DNA of 64,000 bases from the NCBI GenBank assembly GCA_964057225.1, contig OZ059894.1:13702001-13766000 (forward strand). The letters are read 5' to 3'. Below, one piece after another: positions 52,336 to 61,381 of this stretch. Numbering within the stretch: position 1 is the first letter of the stretch; the number at the start of each line of letters is the position of its first letter. The DNA comes from Auanema rhodensis. Lineage: Eukaryota > Animalia > Nematoda. Below the pieces are notes generated by a model. That model did no database searches. It was not told the DNA's origin and saw only the letters and a list, made by a program, of their open reading frames with translations. Position numbers and translations under genes: made by a program.

Positions 52336-55300
52336 TTATTCCTCAATGTCATCATCCAGAATTCTACCTCGTGATGCGCTGCGCATGTTCGAAACTGTGG
52401 CTGAAGACATCTATAAGTAAGATTACTGTAGAAATTTCTTTGTCCTTTGGGAAATAATTACCGAATGAGCTAAACCTCTCCCACCGAAAGCAATTGATCC
52501 ACTTCTGGTCTTTAAACGCATTTTCGATAAAGCATTCTCAGCAGCATCAGCTCTGAAAAGAGGCAAACAATATTTATACTTTTAATTAAATGAATAAAAT
52601 TAATTAATTTAGATTAAATAACGAAACCTTTCTTCAGCATCTTCCAATGAATGTTGCAATTGACGGTATTTAGCTAAGTTTTGAGCTGCGAGATTCTCCT
52701 TAACAAATAATGAATTTCGTAAAAAAAAACATAAATATATAATATTTCTTACAGCATCTTCCAATTGTCGTTTGTATGTCTTAATCTTGTTCTGTAATTT
52801 CTCAATCAGATCATATAGACGCTCAGATGATTTCTTATCTTCATCAACCTATAATATCAGTATAATAAGTTTTCATTTCATATTTCTATTATGCATACTT
52901 GGAACTGAAGTTCACGGCATTTTCTGTCCTTGTTACGTAAGTTCTTGAGTGTTTCAGCATGACGACGACCTTCAGAATCAAGCTCTGATTCCAATTCGCG
53001 CGTTTTGTTTTCCAATTTGGCAATGACTCTCTTTCCACCTTTCATGCTTTGTGCTTCTGCTTCATCTAATCTTGTTTGGAGATCCTACAATTGGTCGCGA
53101 AATTGAAAATGTGAAATTCGATTATACAAAAACCTTGATTTGACTCTCCATCTGCTTTCTAGCTCTTTCGAGATTCTGTGAATGCTCATGTTCAGATCGA
53201 AGATCTTCAGTTAAGCGAGTTGTTTCAGCGGTAAGCTACAATACTATAACAATGAAAACACAAAAGTATTGTGTAAACTATACCTTCTTCTTCAGATCAT
53301 CAGCTGATTTGAGCTCGTTCAAGGTTTCAGTAACTTCAATTTGCAGATGCTGAAGTTCTCCTTCAACTTTACGTTTTATTGCAGTTAAAGAAGCATTTTG
53401 ATTGGCTAGGCTAGAAACAGTATCCCTAAGGTCAACATTCTCAACTTCAGCTTGACGACGAGCACGTTCAGCTTGTTCATATCCCATTGCGAGATCTTCC
53501 TTCTCTTGCTGCAAGATTTGAGATCTACGTTCAGCACTGGAAGCTTGATCACGATGTTCTTCTTTCATACGCTGCTCTTCTTCAACTTGAAGCTAAATGA
53601 TGAAAGTTTTTAAAATCTGCTTGTTGATAAGTATCTCACTTGTAAGTCGCGGATATGATCTTGATATCTTTTCAAGTTTTTCTGAGCATCAACTCCAGCC
53701 TTATTAGAGTGATCTAGAGCAATTTCAAGTTCATTAATATCGCTTTCAAGTTTTTTCTTCATGCGCAACAGCTCAGCACGGCCTCGACTCTCGGTTTCAA
53801 GTGAAGCCTATAACATGTTTAAACAAATCGTATATACATATAGTCATTCTAGTTGATGCTATATCTCTAGTTTTACCTGCATGCTCTCTAATGCTCGTTG
53901 ATGATTCTTGCGAGTATTTTCAAATTCTTCTTCTTTTTCTTGTAGACGCTTTTCGATTTCAGCTCTAATCTGACTAACTTCTACCTGGGCTCGGAGGACT
54001 TTAGCTTCTTCAGCTTCAAGAGCTGTTTCAGCATCATCCAGAGCTTGCTATAATACATATAAAGTTGCTATGCATAAGTTATATTAAATTACTTGAAGTT
54101 CTTCCTTTTCCAATTCAAGTTTGCGGCGCAATTTCTGGAGGTCATGAACACTCTTTCCTCCTTCTCCTAACTGATCAGCAATATCCTTCAACTCTTGGCT
54201 CAAAGCCTTGTTCTCTCGACGAACACCTTCGATCTGAAATCAAAAAATGAGTTCAATTCTAAAAATAAAACACTTACTTGTTCGTGTGATTCTTCCAATT
54301 GGTTACGAAGTCTGAATGTTTCAGTGGCTGCTGATCGAGTATCCCGTTGAGCTGATTCAAGTTCCTAATCATGTTCAATGAGATACACTTCCGGAAATCA
54401 CTTACTTGAACCAAGTTTTCACATTTCCTCTTCCATTCCTCGACCACCTTGTCGAATCCTTTCTGTTTTCTCTCGAGAGCAGCTGCATGTTGATTAGCCT
54501 GTGAGAAATCATTTTTTCTTGAACACCTGTGGGAAATCACGTACTCTATCAGCATCTACTTGAGCGTCTTCAAGCTCATGTGTAAGGCGTTGTCTGGTCT
54601 TTTCAAGAGAACCAATCTTTTGATTAGAAGCTTCCAGTTGTTCTTGAACTTCCTGTACTCTGTTAGCCAATTTACGACGAGCTTCCTCAAGCTCTTCAGA
54701 ACGATTCATACCTTCGCCTTCAAATCGAGCACGCCATTGTTGAGTCTCAGCATTAGCCTTGCTATAATTGAATTAAAATATTATGAAAAATTGTATAAGA
54801 AACAATTACCTGATCAGACGTTGAAGTTCGGTCTTAGCATCCTGTTCTTCCTCCAATTGTTCTCGAAGTTGTTCACATTCCAATTGATAATTGGCAGACT
54901 AAATGAAATACACATTTAAAAATAAAATAAAATATTTGAAGAAAAACAAACCTGAGAATGCAAATTATGACGTTCACGGCTCTCTTGTTCCAGCTGTCTA
55001 CGAAGCTCTTCATTTTGTGTATGTTGTTGTGCTTTAATTCTATTAAGAGCAGCTAATTGAGATTCAGCATCCTCAAGTTGTCTAAAATATTGATTATATG
55101 TACATAATAACTATTATATTCTTTAACAATAGATTGATAAACTACAAAAAGATAACGAGATTATTTGACATTTTTTCTCATAAGATGTACGGAAATTCCA
55201 TTATTGAGATCAATTTCATGACTGATCCCGTTAGAATTCTATGATGTTAAACTATTCCGTTTAAGGGAACGTGGAATCAGATTTCTATCGAGGTTTCATC

Positions 55301-58300
55301 GTCTGCTGGCAGACGTTTGAGCCCGTTTTTTTGGAAAAAGGCTTGGTTTGTCCGATGCCGATAAGCTTATGAGTCTAGTTCTAGCTAGCGTATGTACCTG
55401 TTCAAATCTGAGTTTTCAGAATGCATCTTGTTCTTGTACATCATTAGTTCTTGAATTTGACGAGCTTGTTCATCGCTCTTCAATGTCATTTCAGTCAATT
55501 GAGTTTCGAGTTGCTTTGCCATGCGCTCACAGTTCTTCAAAGAATTTCATAGTTAGGGACTTCTATTTGACGCTGTTCTAACCTGTCGTTGTTTAGCTTC
55601 AGAATCATTTTGCTGATGTAATTCATCAATTTCACGTTGCAATTGAGCCTTATCCTTCTCAAGTCTGGAAAAAGACAAAATGCTTAATAGAAGAAATGAC
55701 CAGAGTGTATTTACTTTCCTCGCATCTTCTGAACTGTATCGAGCTGATCGCTCAATTCAGCAATAGAATCATTATGTTTTTTACGAAGAGCAGCCATAGC
55801 AGTTTCATTGTTGATTGAAACATCTTCCAAATCACGTCGAAGTTTAGATAACTTAACCAAAATCATCTTTAAGTCTCATAGATTTTCAAGCTCACCTCAG
55901 CTTCACGCTTCTTATTCAGTTCCATTTGAGCTTGAGTGACACCTCCAGCTTCATCCAAGCGATCTCCTAATTCTTCAAGTTCAAGTTGCATCTCATTTCG
56001 AGCTTTTTCAGCCTTAGCACGGCCTTGACGTTCAGCTTCAAGCTCTTCTTCGAGTTCTTGGATGCGAGCCAAAAGTTCCTTTATTTGACGTTGAAGTTTG
56101 GCAACAAGAGACTGTTCATCCTCCAAACGAGAACATAAAGAATGAATTTCAGCATCCTTCCTGTAAATTATATTTGTTGAAGATAAAATAATATTTTTCA
56201 TCATACTTCTTCAAATTATTTTCCAATTCATGTCTTTGACGATTAATTTCTTCGATAGCCTCTTGAGCCAACTGAAATAAAAAGCTAACGACTATACTCA
56301 AATAATCTATTCAAACCTTAAGTTCTCCTTCAACCTTTCTTTTTTGTTTCTCACAATCTTGGCGATTACGCTTCTCACGCTCAAGATTATCCTCAAGCTC
56401 ATCCAATGTAGATTCAAGCTTAGCTTTAACTTTGTTCATATGATTCACCTTATCTTCTTCTGCTTGAATATCATCCAAAAGCTTACGGTTGATCTATAAG
56501 CACAATACAAACTTATAAAACTTTTACGGGTGCAAGTGAACCTCTTCTTGATGTTTCTTTTCCTTATTCAACTTAGAAATTACCTCATCTTGAGCACCAA
56601 TCTCATCCTGAAAAATAGATTGTTACTGTAACTACGACCTATTATATGACTCACTTGAAGGCTTCGAATTTGATGATCACGACTTTGTTTCTCACTTTCC
56701 TGCTTCTTGATTGTAGTTTCCAAATCAGACACAGTCTTCTTCAACGACTCGTTATCAGTTTCAACCTGGAAGATCAGTTATTCTCCTAATAAAGGAAAAC
56801 AAAGAAAGAATACCTTCTTCTTAGCTTTGCTAAGAGAAGCATTCTTATCTTCTTGATCGGCTAACTGATCATTCATATCAGTCAGCTGTCTTTCCAAATC
56901 AGCTTTCTGAGATAATAGTTTAGCTCCACGTTCTTCTCCTTCTGTATTAGCATCACGCTCTTGCTCAAGTTGTAAGACCATTGCTTGTTTTTCAGCCTAA
57001 ACATGAGATTTTAATCAAAAAATTCACAGAGTCTTTTACAATAAGGCGTTGATTCTCAGCTTCCAAATCTTTTCTTTTGGTAGTCTCTTTTCCGTGAGAT
57101 TCTTCAAGTTCCTTGAATCTAAAATAATTAAAAGTTCATAGATGATATTATTGGTATTTGATAATACTTCTTCTCAAGAGCTTCCATTTCTTCATGTTTC
57201 TTGTTACCCTTGATAAGAGGCTTAACACGACCAAATAACTTGAACCATGACCAATTACGAAGCGTACACCAAGCACGAACATTTCGTTGAACAATCAGTA
57301 ATCCAACTCTGAATATTGTGAATGTAAGTGAAGCCTCAATAGAATTTATTACCTTTGAGTTTTCTTTCTCTTGTATTCACATTGAGCGAGATAATGACGG
57401 CAAGCACATTGGAATTTATTGATAATCACTCCAAGAGCTTCATCACGAAGTTCTTCTAAATGAGCTAGAACTCCGGCTTTGAAAAAGACCTAAAATAATT
57501 ATAAGTTGAAATATTATTTAAAGAGTTTATATGTTTTATAGAAATAAGATAGGTTTAACATAAAAATAACTGAGAAAGGTTGAAACTTCATGCAGACCTT
57601 AGTTAATCCACATTGGAACTCTTCTTCTTTCAATGATCCCTTTGCAATCAATTGAGCAGCAATTTTCTCTCCTGACTCCTTAACATCTTTGCCTTGCTTT
57701 GAAGCTTCAGCTGCTAATACAGCATATCTGAAGTGTTTAACTAAGCAAAACATAAAGTGGTTATTATCATATAAAACTTAAAAAACATGATAAACTTAAA
57801 GTAAGCTTAATGCATATATGTTAATTGACATATAACTAACTTAAAATATAATTTATAAAGAAATAGAACATAGAATCACACATCATTCATACACACGCAT
57901 CATCTCTCACCTTTGTCATTCCATTACGGAAGGAATCAATCTTCAGTTTCCCATGTTTTGTTAAAGATGTTGTCATCTTTTCACCGGCGATCCGCGCATC
58001 ACGATGTGAAGCTTCGTCCGGTGCCAAAACTCCATATCTTTACGGGACAGACAATGATTGAATTAATTGAAAATCATTTTCTTATCACTCATCAACTCTC
58101 AGTTTTGATATTTTTTCATAATTTTCTATTGAAATACCTTTGCTTGAAATCTTCGTATGGCATTCTATTAGGGAATCCTTTCCGACAGATACGAATTCCT
58201 TCCAGTACTCCGTTACATGTTAATTGATTCAAGACTAAGTTGGCTTCGATAACACCTTAAAAATGAATTAATTGCTTTCAATTCTTTTTGAGTTATAATC

Positions 58301-61300
58301 TTAGTACATACCACTCTTCTTCTGTTCATTGGGAATAATACAACGAATAAAATGAGGATGTGTTTGATGAAGCATTTGCATCAACTTGTTTAATGACTCA
58401 CGATACATCATAGACACGGTCATAAAACTAGCAGATTTTCCCTTGAATATCATATCATTTTATCATTTTGGTCTGCAAGTTACCTTCTTCTTACTGATTC
58501 CAGCAGCAGCCTTCTTGCCCATGTTAGCAATATCTTCTTGGGTATTATAGTCGGCCCAGAGTTCCGACATCAACTCGTTGCCGTTGTTAGCTTTAAGCAC
58601 AGTAACAGCGGTATCGTTCAAAGGATCCTATTAACAATATTTTAAGTTTAAAATATTTATCAAATATGTAGTTAAATATTATTTTATAATATATAAAACT
58701 ATGAATTATGACTAAAATTTTCACGTTTCTCACGTAAATGCTAATTAATTATCAGATATTCATATTAAGTAGAATCATTTTAATTGGAATGATTTCATAA
58801 TTTGGTTGCATTTTTGATTAAATTAATTTCATTTTTAGTTAATTTTATAATTAATTTACCTTGTTCTTTTCCAACCATCCCTTGCAATTATACCGTACAG
58901 TACCAGCGTAATGAACAATTGCAAGATGAGCTTCAGCCTACGAAGACAAAGGGGTTTTTCTTTCTAATTTTATCAGAAACTATCATTATTTACCTGTTTG
59001 CCTTTAGGTGGTTTGGGTTTTTGGAAGTTTGGATGCTTACCCAAATGCTGATCATTCAGCTTTTGAGCCAAAGTCAAATCAGAAGCTTTAGGAACAATGC
59101 ATTCCTCATCCAACATAGAAATAATACCCAAAGGCTATAAATAGTCTGATCTTCAAGAGTTATTCAATAGGATAGTTTGTTACCTTCTCAATCAACTCAA
59201 TACAAGCTTGAAGATCAAGACCAAAATCAATGAATTCCCATTTAATTCCTTCACGCTGATACTCCTAAAAATTATTTAAAATTTATAAATTAATAATATT
59301 ACTAACTTCTTGTTCTAGAACAAACATATGATGATTGAAGAATTGTTGAAGACGTTCATTAACAAAGTTAATCCATAACTGTTCAAATGAGTTCAAATCG
59401 AAAATTTCGAAACCAGCAATATCGAGAACTCCGATGAAACAATCGCGAGATAGATCTTGAGCATCAAGCGTCTTGTTACATCTATAATGCTCTTGGTACA
59501 TTAATGTATATCGTATAGTTTATAAACCTCTTGATAAGCCAACTGAACATACGAGCATAAAGAGCTTTAGCAAGAGCTCCAACAGCCCAATTAACTTGAT
59601 CAAGATTTTGACCTTTATTAACCCATTCTGTTCCAACTTTTACTCTTGGCTTGAGAAGAGCCTGTATGAACTTATCATAATCAACTTGGAATAATTTACA
59701 AGCAATTTCTCCTTCTATAATATGAAATTAATGTTCATTTCTTCTTAATCTGTGTAGCTTGCCTTTTCCATTGTCAAGTTCTGCTTGCTCTTCTCTAGGA
59801 CGTTGCTTGAAAGTACATTCTCCCATGTGCATCAAAGCTAAGAAAAGTATAAAGATATAATCATTCTCATACTTATCTACTTACCACCAGTGATGGCAAA
59901 CAACTCATCCTTTTCCCTTTGACTGAATTTCATAATGTTGAAAGCTTCCTAGAAGAATATTTCTTCTTTTCAGTAAACTATGAGTGAAATACCTCAGTCA
60001 AAAGCATTTCTTCTTTATCATCAATACCATCAATAGTAACTTCAGCCTGTGCAACGAATTTGTAGTCCTTGATGGGACGATCCAGCAAAAGACGTTCTGT
60101 ATCATTAGTATTAGTTATATATATTATCTTATTCAGCATAAGTTTCACCTTTCAAGCCTGGGAGAGCGCCAGAATATAGTTGGTAGAAAATGTGATAGCA
60201 GCGTTCTCCTGGAGCTTGTTTGATAACACGAGATTTTTCAAGAAGATCTTAATTATTATTATTTTTTAATTAAAAAGGAAGTTTGTATACAATGCTCAAT
60301 ATCAGCTCCAGCAACTTTACCACCATGATTGAAATGAATTCTGATAAATTTACCAAAACGAGAGGAATTATTGTTTCTCACAGTCTTGGCATTACCTAAA
60401 ATATATTATATATTAAACATTTTTCATCATTTTTCAATACCGAATGCTTCAAGTACAGGATTGGTTTGAACAATTTGATCTTCTAGGGAAACTGTTCCTT
60501 TCTCTTTTTTTTGTCTAAAACGGTATTTTCAGAAAATATTTGATTTGAATATGATTACTGAGTGGCTCCAACGGTAGCAAAGTATGATATTACTTTCTTG
60601 GTGTTTTCAGTCTTACCAGCTCCTGATTCTCCAGTAATCAACATAGATTGATTCTCACGATCTTTAGAATCAGATTATTATAAAAAATTATTGTAAGTAT
60701 ATAACTACCATTAGTCATGTTTCTATATGCTTCATCGGAAACAGCAAAAAGATGAGGTGGCATCTCATTTCTCCGTTTTCCCATGTACATCTTACAGACG
60801 CTTTCAGTATAGATTGGTAAGCGCTTGTATGGATTTATTACAACACAGAAAAGACCAGAATATGTCTAAAGATCGATTTTTTCTGATTTTCTTCTGTTTG
60901 TTTCAAAATTCTTACGTAAATCATCATGGAGTAATATCTTTGTCGTAAGTTGTGAAGTACAGAAGCATCATTGAGGAAAGTCAAATTTGCCATGTCTTCA
61001 GTTCTTTCGAATTTCGGAGGATTCATCTGTTGAACTTCGTCCTTTTTCAAAGTTTTCTGAAAATATAAAAACAGTTCTTCCCAGTTTCTCGTTTAATATG
61101 AACCTCTTGCCCCTTGCTTGTGACGACTGTCATGGTGTCACCTTTGGACGATTTGATCTCAGCGGCGACAAAGCCTTAAAAATGAATTTAAACAACTATT
61201 CTGATGAGAATAATCTACCATCATCAGGATCCGCTATCCATACATTTTTCTTAGAATCGAATTTCTTGGTTGTATTAGCAAGAATCTTTAAATATTGATG

Positions 61301-61381
61301 AAATCAAAAATATCCTATCCATGTAAGGATTACCTGCTCTTTTGACTGGCGTAAAAACTGCCAGCCTGGATCCTGTTCCAT
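52336..61381 (-). CDS. myo-5: Muscle myosin II heavy chain (complete, many short exons), most similar to C. elegans MYO-5
   Basis: [12 protein letters not shown]...[105 protein letters not shown], then a coiled-coil rod ending [11 protein letters not shown]. The myosin II call is certain; the myo-5 orthology is from recalled N-terminal sequence only. Confidence 0.95.
57598..57727 (-). CDS. Myosin converter-domain exon, variant B (130 nt)
   Basis: cttcag|A TAT GCT...ACT AAG|gtctg encodes (R)[43 protein letters not shown]. Confidence 0.92.
57911..58037 (-). CDS. Myosin converter-domain exon, variant A (127 nt), mutually exclusive with variant B
   Basis: gtaaag|A TAT GGA...ACA AAG|gtgag encodes (R)[42 protein letters not shown]; same phases as variant B and homologous to it. 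Confidence 0.88.

What the first reader, a model, noticed from the sequence alone, without database searches (positions are those of the whole stretch)
57598..58037. Hidden pair of mutually exclusive converter-domain exons in a nematode muscle myosin heavy chain
Seen: between the exon ending ...DFKQ-AG (58138) and the exon starting VFFKAG (57489) lie two homologous, stop-free cassettes. A is 58037-57911 ([42 protein letters not shown]) and B is 57727-57598 ([43 protein letters not shown]). Both are phase 2 to phase 0 (127 and 130 nt), so using both or neither shifts the frame. They share YxVLA, GEK, GxLK, FxxGxTK. Known: this segment is the converter, which Drosophila Mhc varies through exon-11 alternatives to tune muscle kinetics, whereas C. 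elegans mainly uses separate myosin genes. Inference: this nematode makes two motor isoforms from one gene. Exon A has a weak acceptor (CCCGTAAAG), a strong donor (GTGAGA) and a downstream TG-rich tract, as expected of a regulated exon.
Basis: partly seen in the sequence, partly recalled or inferred. Interest (0 to 1): 0.82.

Follow-up and report, generated by a model that had tools for sequence, protein, structure and literature searches.

The report
Conserved alternative converter exons in nematode myo-5
This worm's myo-5 muscle myosin gene carries two interchangeable versions of one exon in the motor's converter; many nematodes share the pair, although the main comparative study says nematodes lost all such exon sets.

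Summary
Two homologous, stop-free cassettes with AG/GT borders lie between the DFKQ exon and the VFFKAG exon of a minus-strand muscle myosin gene. They are A (58037-57911, 127 nt) and B (57727-57598, 130 nt). The gene is the myo-5 orthologue of a rhabditid worm; Auanema sp. JU1783 is the closest relative found.

Using both exons or neither gives an early stop. In the only RNA available (spliced contigs, four runs, one study) exon B is used and A is skipped, so use of A here is not shown.

Exon A is not a dead copy. An orthologous A-type exon with intact splice sites, the same phase and the same position exists in Auanema, two Mesorhabditis species and Halicephalobus. A-type sequence also appears in deposited protein models of Panagrellus, M. 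belari and Plectus. It is under purifying selection and has exon-like GC content. A keeps the canonical basic residue that I place at Drosophila Arg-759; B has Gln.

Caenorhabditis, Diploscapter, Nippostrongylus, Steinernema and Ditylenchus carry a single converter exon. The 2014 claim of loss appears to rest on C. elegans alone. I found no paper describing this cluster.

The parts
58138..58255 (-). Constitutive upstream exon (SH1 helix and start of the converter, ...[13 protein letters not shown]). It ends with AG, the first two bases of the split Arg codon.
   Evidence: RNA contigs cover 58138-58253/5 and splice from 58138. It is 97% identical in protein to Auanema.
57911..58037 (-). Exon A, the alternative converter cassette: 127 nt, 42 codons plus 1 base, A-type (YG.LAP.EAS ... 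AGE ... [YF][RK].G.TK).
   Evidence: It is stop-free with AG/GT borders and 44% GC. Orthologues lie at L001 4942-5068, L004 6762-6891, L005 3408-3534 and L010 15889-16015. dN/dS against Auanema is 0.38. It is skipped in the RNA contigs available.
57598..57727 (-). Exon B, the default converter cassette: 130 nt, 43 codons plus 1 base, myo-5-type ending ...EEFQCGLTK.
   Evidence: Spliced into the transcript contigs of all four runs. It is 79% identical to Auanema B, with dN/dS 0.09.
57353..57489 (-). Constitutive downstream exon ([17 protein letters not shown]..., end of the converter and start of the lever helix).
   Evidence: RNA contig pieces cover 57353-57485/9. It is 91% identical to Auanema.
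57876..57898 (-). GU-rich tract (GUGUG twice) 13-35 nt downstream of the exon A donor.
   Evidence: A GUGUG run lies at a similar offset in Auanema (starts 27-34 there; 15-30 here), in introns that otherwise do not align. It is absent or weak in Mesorhabditis and Halicephalobus. Any role in splicing control is inferred.
57589..57594 (-). UGCAUG (RBFOX-type motif) at +4 to +9 of the intron after exon B.
   Evidence: It sits at the identical position in Auanema. The background in the window is 0.17 per kb per strand. In both Mesorhabditis species UGCAUG lies in the A-B intron instead, and Halicephalobus has none. Binding is inferred, not tested.
57982..58023 (-). GC-rich 5' half of exon A, with very low synonymous divergence and a predicted internal hairpin.
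   Evidence: Codons 1-20 have dS 0.15 against Auanema, versus 0.9-2.3 in neighbouring exons. The hairpin is -17.8 kcal/mol but its z-score is only -1.2 to -1.8. This is unexplained.
52400..61381 (-). The whole intron-rich myo-5 orthologue. The ATG is at 61381-61379; the 3' end at about 52.4 kb is approximate.
   Evidence: Open frames and tblastn hits of nematode myosin heavy chains cover the stretch. The best match is Auanema sp. JU1783 P0276, about 71% identical.

Best explanation
Exons A and B are a conserved two-member set of mutually exclusive exons in the nematode myo-5 muscle myosin gene. Each encodes the central 42-43 residues of the converter, equivalent to UNC-54 residues 729-771 and to Drosophila Mhc exon 11.

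Exactly one exon must be spliced in. Each is 1 mod 3 in length, so including both, or neither, shifts the frame and gives a stop within 7-9 codons. Such transcripts would presumably be removed by nonsense-mediated decay.

B is the default exon in bulk RNA. A has the poorer acceptor and is most likely a minority exon used in a particular tissue, stage or sex.

The two converters differ at a few diagnostic positions. A keeps the canonical basic residue ([YF]-[RK]-x-G-x-T-K) that I place at the position of Drosophila Arg-759, a residue shown there to contact the relay loop. B has Gln-Cys at that point. The switch would therefore be expected to change relay-converter coupling and motor kinetics.

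Shown: the anatomy, the frame logic, use of B, conservation and purifying selection on A, and separate A-only and B-only protein models in Panagrellus.
Inferred: use of A in this species, its tissue specificity, the splicing regulators, decay of mis-spliced forms, and the kinetic effect.
For: Anatomy and frame.

Use of B: junctions 58138>57727 and 57598>57489 appear in spliced contigs of four runs.

Orthologous A-type exons lie upstream of B, with AG/GT borders and lengths of 127 or 130 nt, in:
- Auanema sp. JU1783, 71% identical to window A
- Mesorhabditis spiculigera
- M. belari
- Halicephalobus sp. NKZ332
.

Selection:
- Window against Auanema: dN/dS is 0.38 for A, against 0.09 for B and 0.02-0.07 for the flanking exons. 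The introns do not align.
- If the 26 observed base changes are placed at random, a stop-free result with 12 or fewer amino-acid changes occurs with P = 0.004.
- In the Mesorhabditis pair, synonymous sites are saturated. A still keeps 65% peptide identity with dN 0.28.

Deposited protein models:
- Panagrellus redivivus: P0330 has A only, P0295 has B only, and P0329 has A, the retained intron and B.
- M. belari P0335 and Plectus sambesii P0328 contain A-type sequence.
- Halicephalobus P0270 reads through A and B.

In a tree of converter peptides the A-types separate from the B-types and from other paralogues, with bootstrap support of 90-99.

Diagnostic columns, including [RK] against Q.

The segment maps to UNC-54 729-771 in PDB entry 6QDJ. 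Drosophila exon 11 is chicken residues 724-764, and Arg-759 is functionally critical (PMC4722456).
Against: No read or contig using exon A was seen in this species. The runs are assembled contigs, which drop minor isoforms, and they come from one study.

No short protein in the large collection resembles A, and no environmental contig encodes an A-type peptide.

Exon A evolves faster than B: dN is 0.18 against 0.13 in one pair and 0.28 against 0.16 in the other.

Several lineages do without A.

The Panagrellus isoforms are automatic models, and I could not inspect their RNA support.

The candidate regulatory motifs are shared only by the two closest species, or sit in different introns in others.

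The match to Drosophila Arg-759 assumes that Drosophila exon 11 ends at the same ...TK. No arthropod gene was fetched to check this.
Confidence: 0.8

Rival explanations
1. Exon A is a dead duplicate (a pseudo-exon) decaying inside the intron, and only B is ever coding.
For: Only B is seen in the available RNA contigs. A has a non-consensus acceptor (AAG). A evolves faster than B.
Against: The open frame, phase and both splice sites are intact in five genomes, although synonymous sites are saturated and introns cannot be aligned. dN/dS is below 1. GC content is 44% against 21-27% in the flanking introns. The converter's invariant residues are retained. An A-only protein model exists in Panagrellus.
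Confidence: 0.03
2. Exon A is conserved mainly as a regulatory 'poison' exon. Including it together with B creates an early stop and lowers myo-5 output, so it is not there to make a second protein.
For: Reading from A into B gives a stop at codon 7 of B. Synonymous change in the 5' half of A is unusually low (dS 0.15), which suggests a constraint at the RNA level.
Against: A poison exon needs neither an open frame nor converter-specific residues. Yet A keeps Y1, L4, A5, G18, G29 and G-x-T-K, and the exact length class, in every species. Amino-acid change is also constrained.
Confidence: 0.07
3. The pair is functional in relatives, but in this species A has recently become silent. It looks intact but is no longer selected.
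For: No use of A was seen here. The acceptor in this species (cccgtaaAG) is among the weakest of the five.
Against: Auanema has the same weak acceptor type (tataaAG), the same GTGAGA donor and the same downstream GU-rich tract. The arrangement is therefore shared, not newly degraded. The frame is intact.
Confidence: 0.1

Closest known systems
Arthropod Mhc MXE cluster-10: Drosophila Mhc exons 11a-e, the converter (Kollmar & Hatje 2014, PMC3912159; PMC4722456; PMC11944230)
   Same: Tandem homologous exons encode the same part of the converter (chicken 724-764). One is used per transcript. The segment begins just after the Arg codon and, as I recall the Drosophila sequence, ends at ...TK before VFF[KR]AG. 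It is the least conserved of the alternative regions. It includes the position of Arg-759, which contacts the relay.
   Different: There are two exons, not five. The gene is one of several nematode paralogues (myo-5), not the single Mhc gene. Common descent is unresolved, because the 2014 study places the gain of cluster-10 in arthropods. Identity of exon borders with the arthropod gene was not tested here. No functional or expression data exist.
Mhc genes in other animal groups that combine several paralogues with exon clusters, such as Lottia gigantea and Metaseiulus occidentalis (PMC3912159)
   Same: A family of separate Mhc genes in which only some members also carry alternative exon clusters.
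   Different: Those cases involve other clusters and other phyla. Nematodes were scored as having none.
C. elegans muscle-regulated mutually exclusive exons such as egl-15 5A/5B, controlled by ASD-1/FOX-1 (UGCAUG) and SUP-12 (GU-rich sites). This is from my own knowledge and was not looked up here.
   Same: A two-exon cluster in a muscle-expressed gene, with a UGCAUG and a GU-rich tract next to the alternative exons.
   Different: No binding or genetic evidence exists here. The motif positions are shared only with Auanema and differ in Mesorhabditis.
Exon choice by competing RNA pairings (docking site and selector sequences), as in Dscam and 14-3-3 zeta
   Same: The outcome is mutually exclusive exon choice.
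   Different: No conserved intronic pairing was found. The 22-nt, 73% complementary arms around exon B have no counterpart in Auanema. Here the reading frame alone suffices to make double inclusion or double skipping unproductive.

Membership tests
Mutually exclusive exon cluster (criteria used by WebScipio / Kollmar) | Neighbouring exons between the same two constitutive exons | tested here: met
   A and B lie between the exons ending at 58138 and starting at 57489.
Mutually exclusive exon cluster (criteria used by WebScipio / Kollmar) | Same splice phase and similar length; both or neither breaks the frame | tested here: met
   Lengths are 127 and 130 nt, both running from phase 2 to phase 0. 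Early stops arise at codon 7 (both included) and codon 9 (both skipped). The same holds in four other genomes.
Mutually exclusive exon cluster (criteria used by WebScipio / Kollmar) | Significant sequence similarity between the exons | tested here: met
   z = 11 against shuffles and BLASTP E = 2e-7.
Mutually exclusive exon cluster (criteria used by WebScipio / Kollmar) | Transcripts that contain exactly one of the exons, each exon seen | tested here: inconclusive
   Only B-containing spliced contigs were seen in this species. A-only and B-only protein models exist for Panagrellus redivivus, but I could not see their RNA support.
Mhc MXE cluster-10 (converter; Drosophila exon 11) | Encodes the central converter segment (chicken 724-764) | tested here: met
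   A profile of the A and B peptides aligns end to end with UNC-54 729-771 in PDB 6QDJ. The residue range of exon 11 comes from PMC4722456.
Mhc MXE cluster-10 (converter; Drosophila exon 11) | Intron positions and phases identical to the arthropod exon 11 borders | not tested
   No arthropod Mhc gene was fetched. The match is inferred from the exon starting after the split Arg codon and ending at ...TK, and from the statement that motor-domain intron positions are conserved across Bilateria (PMC3912159).
Mhc MXE cluster-10 (converter; Drosophila exon 11) | Descent from the same ancestral exon duplication as in arthropods | not testable with these tools
   42 residues carry too little signal. 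The profile did not reach Drosophila myosin structures at E <= 1.
Nematode myo-5 orthologue group | Best matches are proteins named MYO-5; converter ends in FQCG.TK | tested here: met
   The closest proteins are Auanema P0276 and C. briggsae P0271. Named members include Pristionchus Myo-5 and CBR-MYO-5. The B exon carries the FQCG signature.
Exon choice by docking-site / selector RNA pairing | Conserved complementary intronic elements flanking the alternative exons | tested here: not met
   The inverted repeats found in the window have no equivalent in Auanema. The exon A hairpin is not significant against shuffles.

The most novel reading that the evidence does not exclude
The nematode A/B converter pair and the arthropod exon-11 cluster descend from one duplication in an early moulting animal. 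On that reading the converter cluster predates arthropods, and nematode Mhc paralogues other than myo-5 lost the alternative exon. In the converter tree the A-types sit apart from both the B-types and all other nematode paralogues, which allows an origin older than the myo-5 lineage. The alternative, an independent duplication of the very same exon in two phyla, would be a clear case of convergence.
Probability: 0.3. Interest if true: 0.7.

Novelty: new member of a known kind. Interest (0 to 1): 0.6.

Why it matters
The reference comparison of animal muscle myosin genes states that nematodes lost all clusters of mutually exclusive exons and rely only on separate genes. Of the six nematode names I searched for in its supplementary species list, only C. 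elegans appears.

The data here show that a converter cluster survives in myo-5 of free-living nematodes across Plectida and across clades IV and V. It was lost repeatedly, including in Caenorhabditis, where the flanking introns are gone.

This changes the reconstruction of how such clusters were gained and lost. It gives the uncharacterised myo-5 gene a testable feature. It also offers small, genetically tractable worms (Auanema, Panagrellus, Mesorhabditis) in which a natural two-state converter switch could be studied. That switch includes a residue I place at the relay-contacting arginine.

Tried and rejected
1. A word search of the large protein collection with the exon A peptide found nothing. 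The length filter makes this uninformative.
2. A 22-nt conserved exon A word and degenerate A-type peptide patterns found nothing in the metagenome contigs.
3. The representative search with a 96-residue rod exon mostly returned fragments. It served only to reach full-length nematode myosins.
5. A scan of the gene for other hidden exon duplicates found none in the motor part. Hits in the rod are coiled-coil repeats.
6. Docking/selector RNA pairing is not conserved. The exon A hairpin is not significant.
7. The Rfam search gave only a chance-level match.
8. phmmer of exon A alone against PDB sequences found nothing. A profile was needed.
9. The idea that the single 42-residue converter of Ditylenchus, Aphelenchoides and Bursaphelenchus is an A/B recombinant is not supported by identity counts.
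10. The + strand open frame 57913-58227 that overlaps exon A is a mechanical ORF and was not pursued.
11. Look-ups for Diploscapter isoform A and M. belari P0287 were not on record. Other isoforms of the same genes worked.
Run and organism names were coded.

Full report
OBSERVATION

On the minus strand of the window lies an intron-rich muscle myosin heavy chain gene. It runs from the ATG at 61381 to about 52.4 kb.

Between the exon ending at 58138 (...DFKQ plus a split AG) and the exon starting at 57489 (VFFKAG...) there are two stop-free cassettes.
- Exon A is 58037-57911, 127 nt, with acceptor gtaaAG and donor GTgaga.
- Exon B is 57727-57598, 130 nt, with acceptor cttcAG and donor GTctgc.

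The two peptides are about 38-40% identical. Their global score is 11 standard deviations above shuffles. In an all-against-all comparison of every minus-strand open frame of the gene, this is the only significant duplicate in the motor part (E = 2e-7).

Exon A has 44% GC and B 38%, while the three surrounding introns have 21-27%.

Each exon is 1 mod 3 in length. If B is read directly after A, a stop appears at codon 7. If both are skipped, the frame hits a stop at codon 9 (read).

WHAT THE RNA SHOWS

Only four small runs from one study hold this stretch. They are served as assembled contigs.

In all four, spliced contigs of up to 4.9 kb join 58138 to 57727 and 57598 to 57489. The neighbouring introns are also removed.

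The gene is therefore transcribed, the flanking exon borders are confirmed, and B is the exon in the dominant transcript.

IDENTITY OF THE GENE

I reached full-length relatives through a rod exon and then through region searches with hits.

The closest protein is that of Auanema sp. JU1783 (P0276), about 71% identical over the tblastn pieces. Next come the myo-5 orthologues of Caenorhabditis, strongylids and others, at about 60-64%.

Named members of this group are Pristionchus Myo-5, CBR-MYO-5 and BMA-MYO-5. Exon B carries the group's converter ending, EEFQCG.TK. A 2022 review states that C. elegans myo-5 is still uncharacterised (PMC9775386).

EXON A IS CONSERVED

I fetched the genomic loci of myo-5 orthologues and searched them with the exon peptides.

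An A-type exon lies between the same two constitutive exons, upstream of B, in four further genomes.
- Auanema sp. JU1783: L001 4942-5068, 71% identical to window A.
- Mesorhabditis spiculigera: L004 6762-6891.
- M. belari: L010 15889-16015.
- Halicephalobus sp. NKZ332: L005 3408-3534.

In every case the frame is open, the borders are AG and GT, and the length is 127 or 130 nt.

Protein records add three more lines of evidence.
- Panagrellus redivivus has three deposited isoforms of one gene: A only (P0330), B only (P0295), and A plus retained intron plus B (P0329).
- M. belari P0335 and Plectus sambesii P0328 are models that run from A-type sequence into B.
- The Halicephalobus model P0270 reads through both exons.

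Selection was measured in two species pairs.
- Window against Auanema: the introns do not align. dN/dS is 0.38 for exon A, 0.09 for B, and 0.02-0.07 for the flanking exons.
- In the same pair, placing the 26 observed base changes at random gives a stop-free result with 12 or fewer amino-acid changes only 0.4% of the time.
- Between the two Mesorhabditis species, synonymous sites are saturated in all four exons. A still keeps 65% peptide identity, with dN 0.28 against 0.16 for B.

A tree of converter peptides separates the A-types from the B-types and from the converters of the other nematode paralogues. Bootstrap support is 90-99, although the alignment has only 45 columns.

The A exon is therefore an old, selected coding exon. 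It is at least as old as the common ancestor of Plectus and Rhabditida.

WHERE IT IS MISSING

- C. briggsae has no introns around the converter and only the B type (L002).
- Diploscapter, Nippostrongylus and Steinernema have an upstream intron of about 50 nt with no room for A.
- Ditylenchus has a single 42-residue converter fused to the upstream exon.
- Toxocara has a 1-kb intron with no recognisable A.
- Filarial myo-5 proteins carry a single converter with some A-like features.

Repeated loss is the simplest reading.

HOW IT MOST LIKELY WORKS

The frame arithmetic makes any transcript with both exons, or neither, unproductive. That alone can enforce one exon per productive message. Removal of such transcripts by nonsense-mediated decay is inferred, not tested.

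B has the better acceptor and is the default. A has a poor acceptor in this species and in Auanema (AAG), a strong GTGAGA donor and a downstream GU-rich tract, all shared by the two species.

A UGCAUG sits at exactly +4 of the intron after B in both species. In Mesorhabditis, UGCAUG lies in the A-B intron instead, and Halicephalobus has none. These motifs resemble the binding sites of muscle splicing regulators known from C. elegans. That comparison rests on my own knowledge, and their role here is a hypothesis.

No conserved intron pairing of the docking/selector kind was found.

At the protein level, a profile of the cassettes aligns with UNC-54 residues 729-771 in the solved motor domain 6QDJ. 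This is the converter segment that Drosophila exon 11 encodes (chicken 724-764; PMC4722456).

Diagnostic differences between A and B include a one-residue deletion and the motif near the end. A has [YF]-[RK]-[IVN]-G-x-T-K and B has F/Y-Q-[CL]-G-x-T-K.

Counting back from the exon end, the [RK]/Q position corresponds to Arg-759. In Drosophila this residue contacts relay residue 509, and the R759E mutation lowers ATPase activity, motility and flight. This mapping assumes the same exon end in Drosophila, which I did not check.

The other nematode paralogues keep the basic residue. A therefore looks like the canonical converter, and B like a myo-5-specific variant of the relay interface. A difference in kinetics is expected by analogy but is untested.

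COMPARISON WITH WHAT IS KNOWN

Kollmar and Hatje (PMC3912159) number the converter cluster as cluster-10. Their gain-and-loss scheme does not list it among the clusters gained in bilaterians or protostomes, and I take it to be among their three arthropod gains. They write that nematodes lost all clusters.

Of the six nematode names I searched for in their supplementary species list, only Caenorhabditis elegans appears. Caenorhabditis is a lineage that lost the pair.

Full-text searches found no paper describing alternative exons in a nematode muscle myosin.

The pair is thus present in a few automated gene models but appears to be undescribed. I file it as a new member of a known kind. Whether it shares ancestry with the arthropod cluster cannot be decided from 42 residues.

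UNEXPLAINED

The first 20 codons of exon A are almost identical at the DNA level between the window and Auanema. dS is 0.15 there, against 0.9-2.3 in neighbouring exons. This half is GC-rich and can form an internal hairpin, but the fold is not better than shuffles.

VERDICT

Use of exon A in this species is still unproven. Interest is moderate to high for myosin evolution and for splicing biology.

Noticed in passing
window 57982-58023 (-); L001 4956-4997: The 5' half of exon A is nearly identical at the DNA level between the window species and Auanema (dS 0.15 against 0.9-2.3 in neighbouring exons). It is GC-rich and can form a hairpin of -17.8 kcal/mol, although the z-score is only about -1.2 to -1.8. 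This may be an RNA-level constraint such as a splicing enhancer.
   Followed up: partly
window 57589-57594 (-); L001 5344-5349; L004 and L010 A-B introns: UGCAUG lies at exactly +4 of the intron after exon B in the window and in Auanema. Both Mesorhabditis species instead carry UGCAUG in the intron between A and B, and Halicephalobus has none. The regulatory layout may differ between lineages.
   Followed up: partly
L008 5278-5403 (Ditylenchus); proteins P0291, P0294, P0299: Tylenchid and aphelenchid myo-5 genes have a single 42-residue converter. It has the A-type length and an AGEKM motif, but the B-type YQCG ending. In Ditylenchus it is fused to the upstream exon. Identity counts do not decide whether it is an A/B recombinant.
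   Followed up: partly
proteins P0307, P0300, P0301, P0303, P0258: Filarial and Gongylonema proteins named MYO-5 carry one converter with A-like features (EEAS..., KMC, DDY[CR]IG.TK). Ascarid and oxyurid proteins carry a B-like one (EEFQ[TA]G). Clade III may have kept different members of the pair in different lineages, or these may be separate paralogues.
   Followed up: no
L004 6330-6700: The intron upstream of exon A in Mesorhabditis spiculigera contains degenerate telomere-like repeats (GGCTTA units), followed by a microsatellite of about 250 nt of GA repeats.
   Followed up: no
L005 501-13143 (protein P0270): The deposited Halicephalobus gene model is 2513 residues long. It fuses the myosin to a ligand-gated ion channel (Neur_chan domains) and reads through the A-B intron, which happens to keep the frame (127+205+130 = 462 nt). 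This is probably an annotation artefact.
   Followed up: no
window 52400-61381 (-) compared with L002: The window gene keeps many short motor-domain exons of about 120-140 nt. The C. briggsae orthologue has lost the introns on both sides of the converter. Intron loss and loss of exon A go together there.
   Followed up: partly
PMC3912159, supplementary file 4: Of the six nematode names I searched for in the species list behind the published statement that nematodes lost all Mhc exon clusters, only Caenorhabditis elegans appears.
   Followed up: yes
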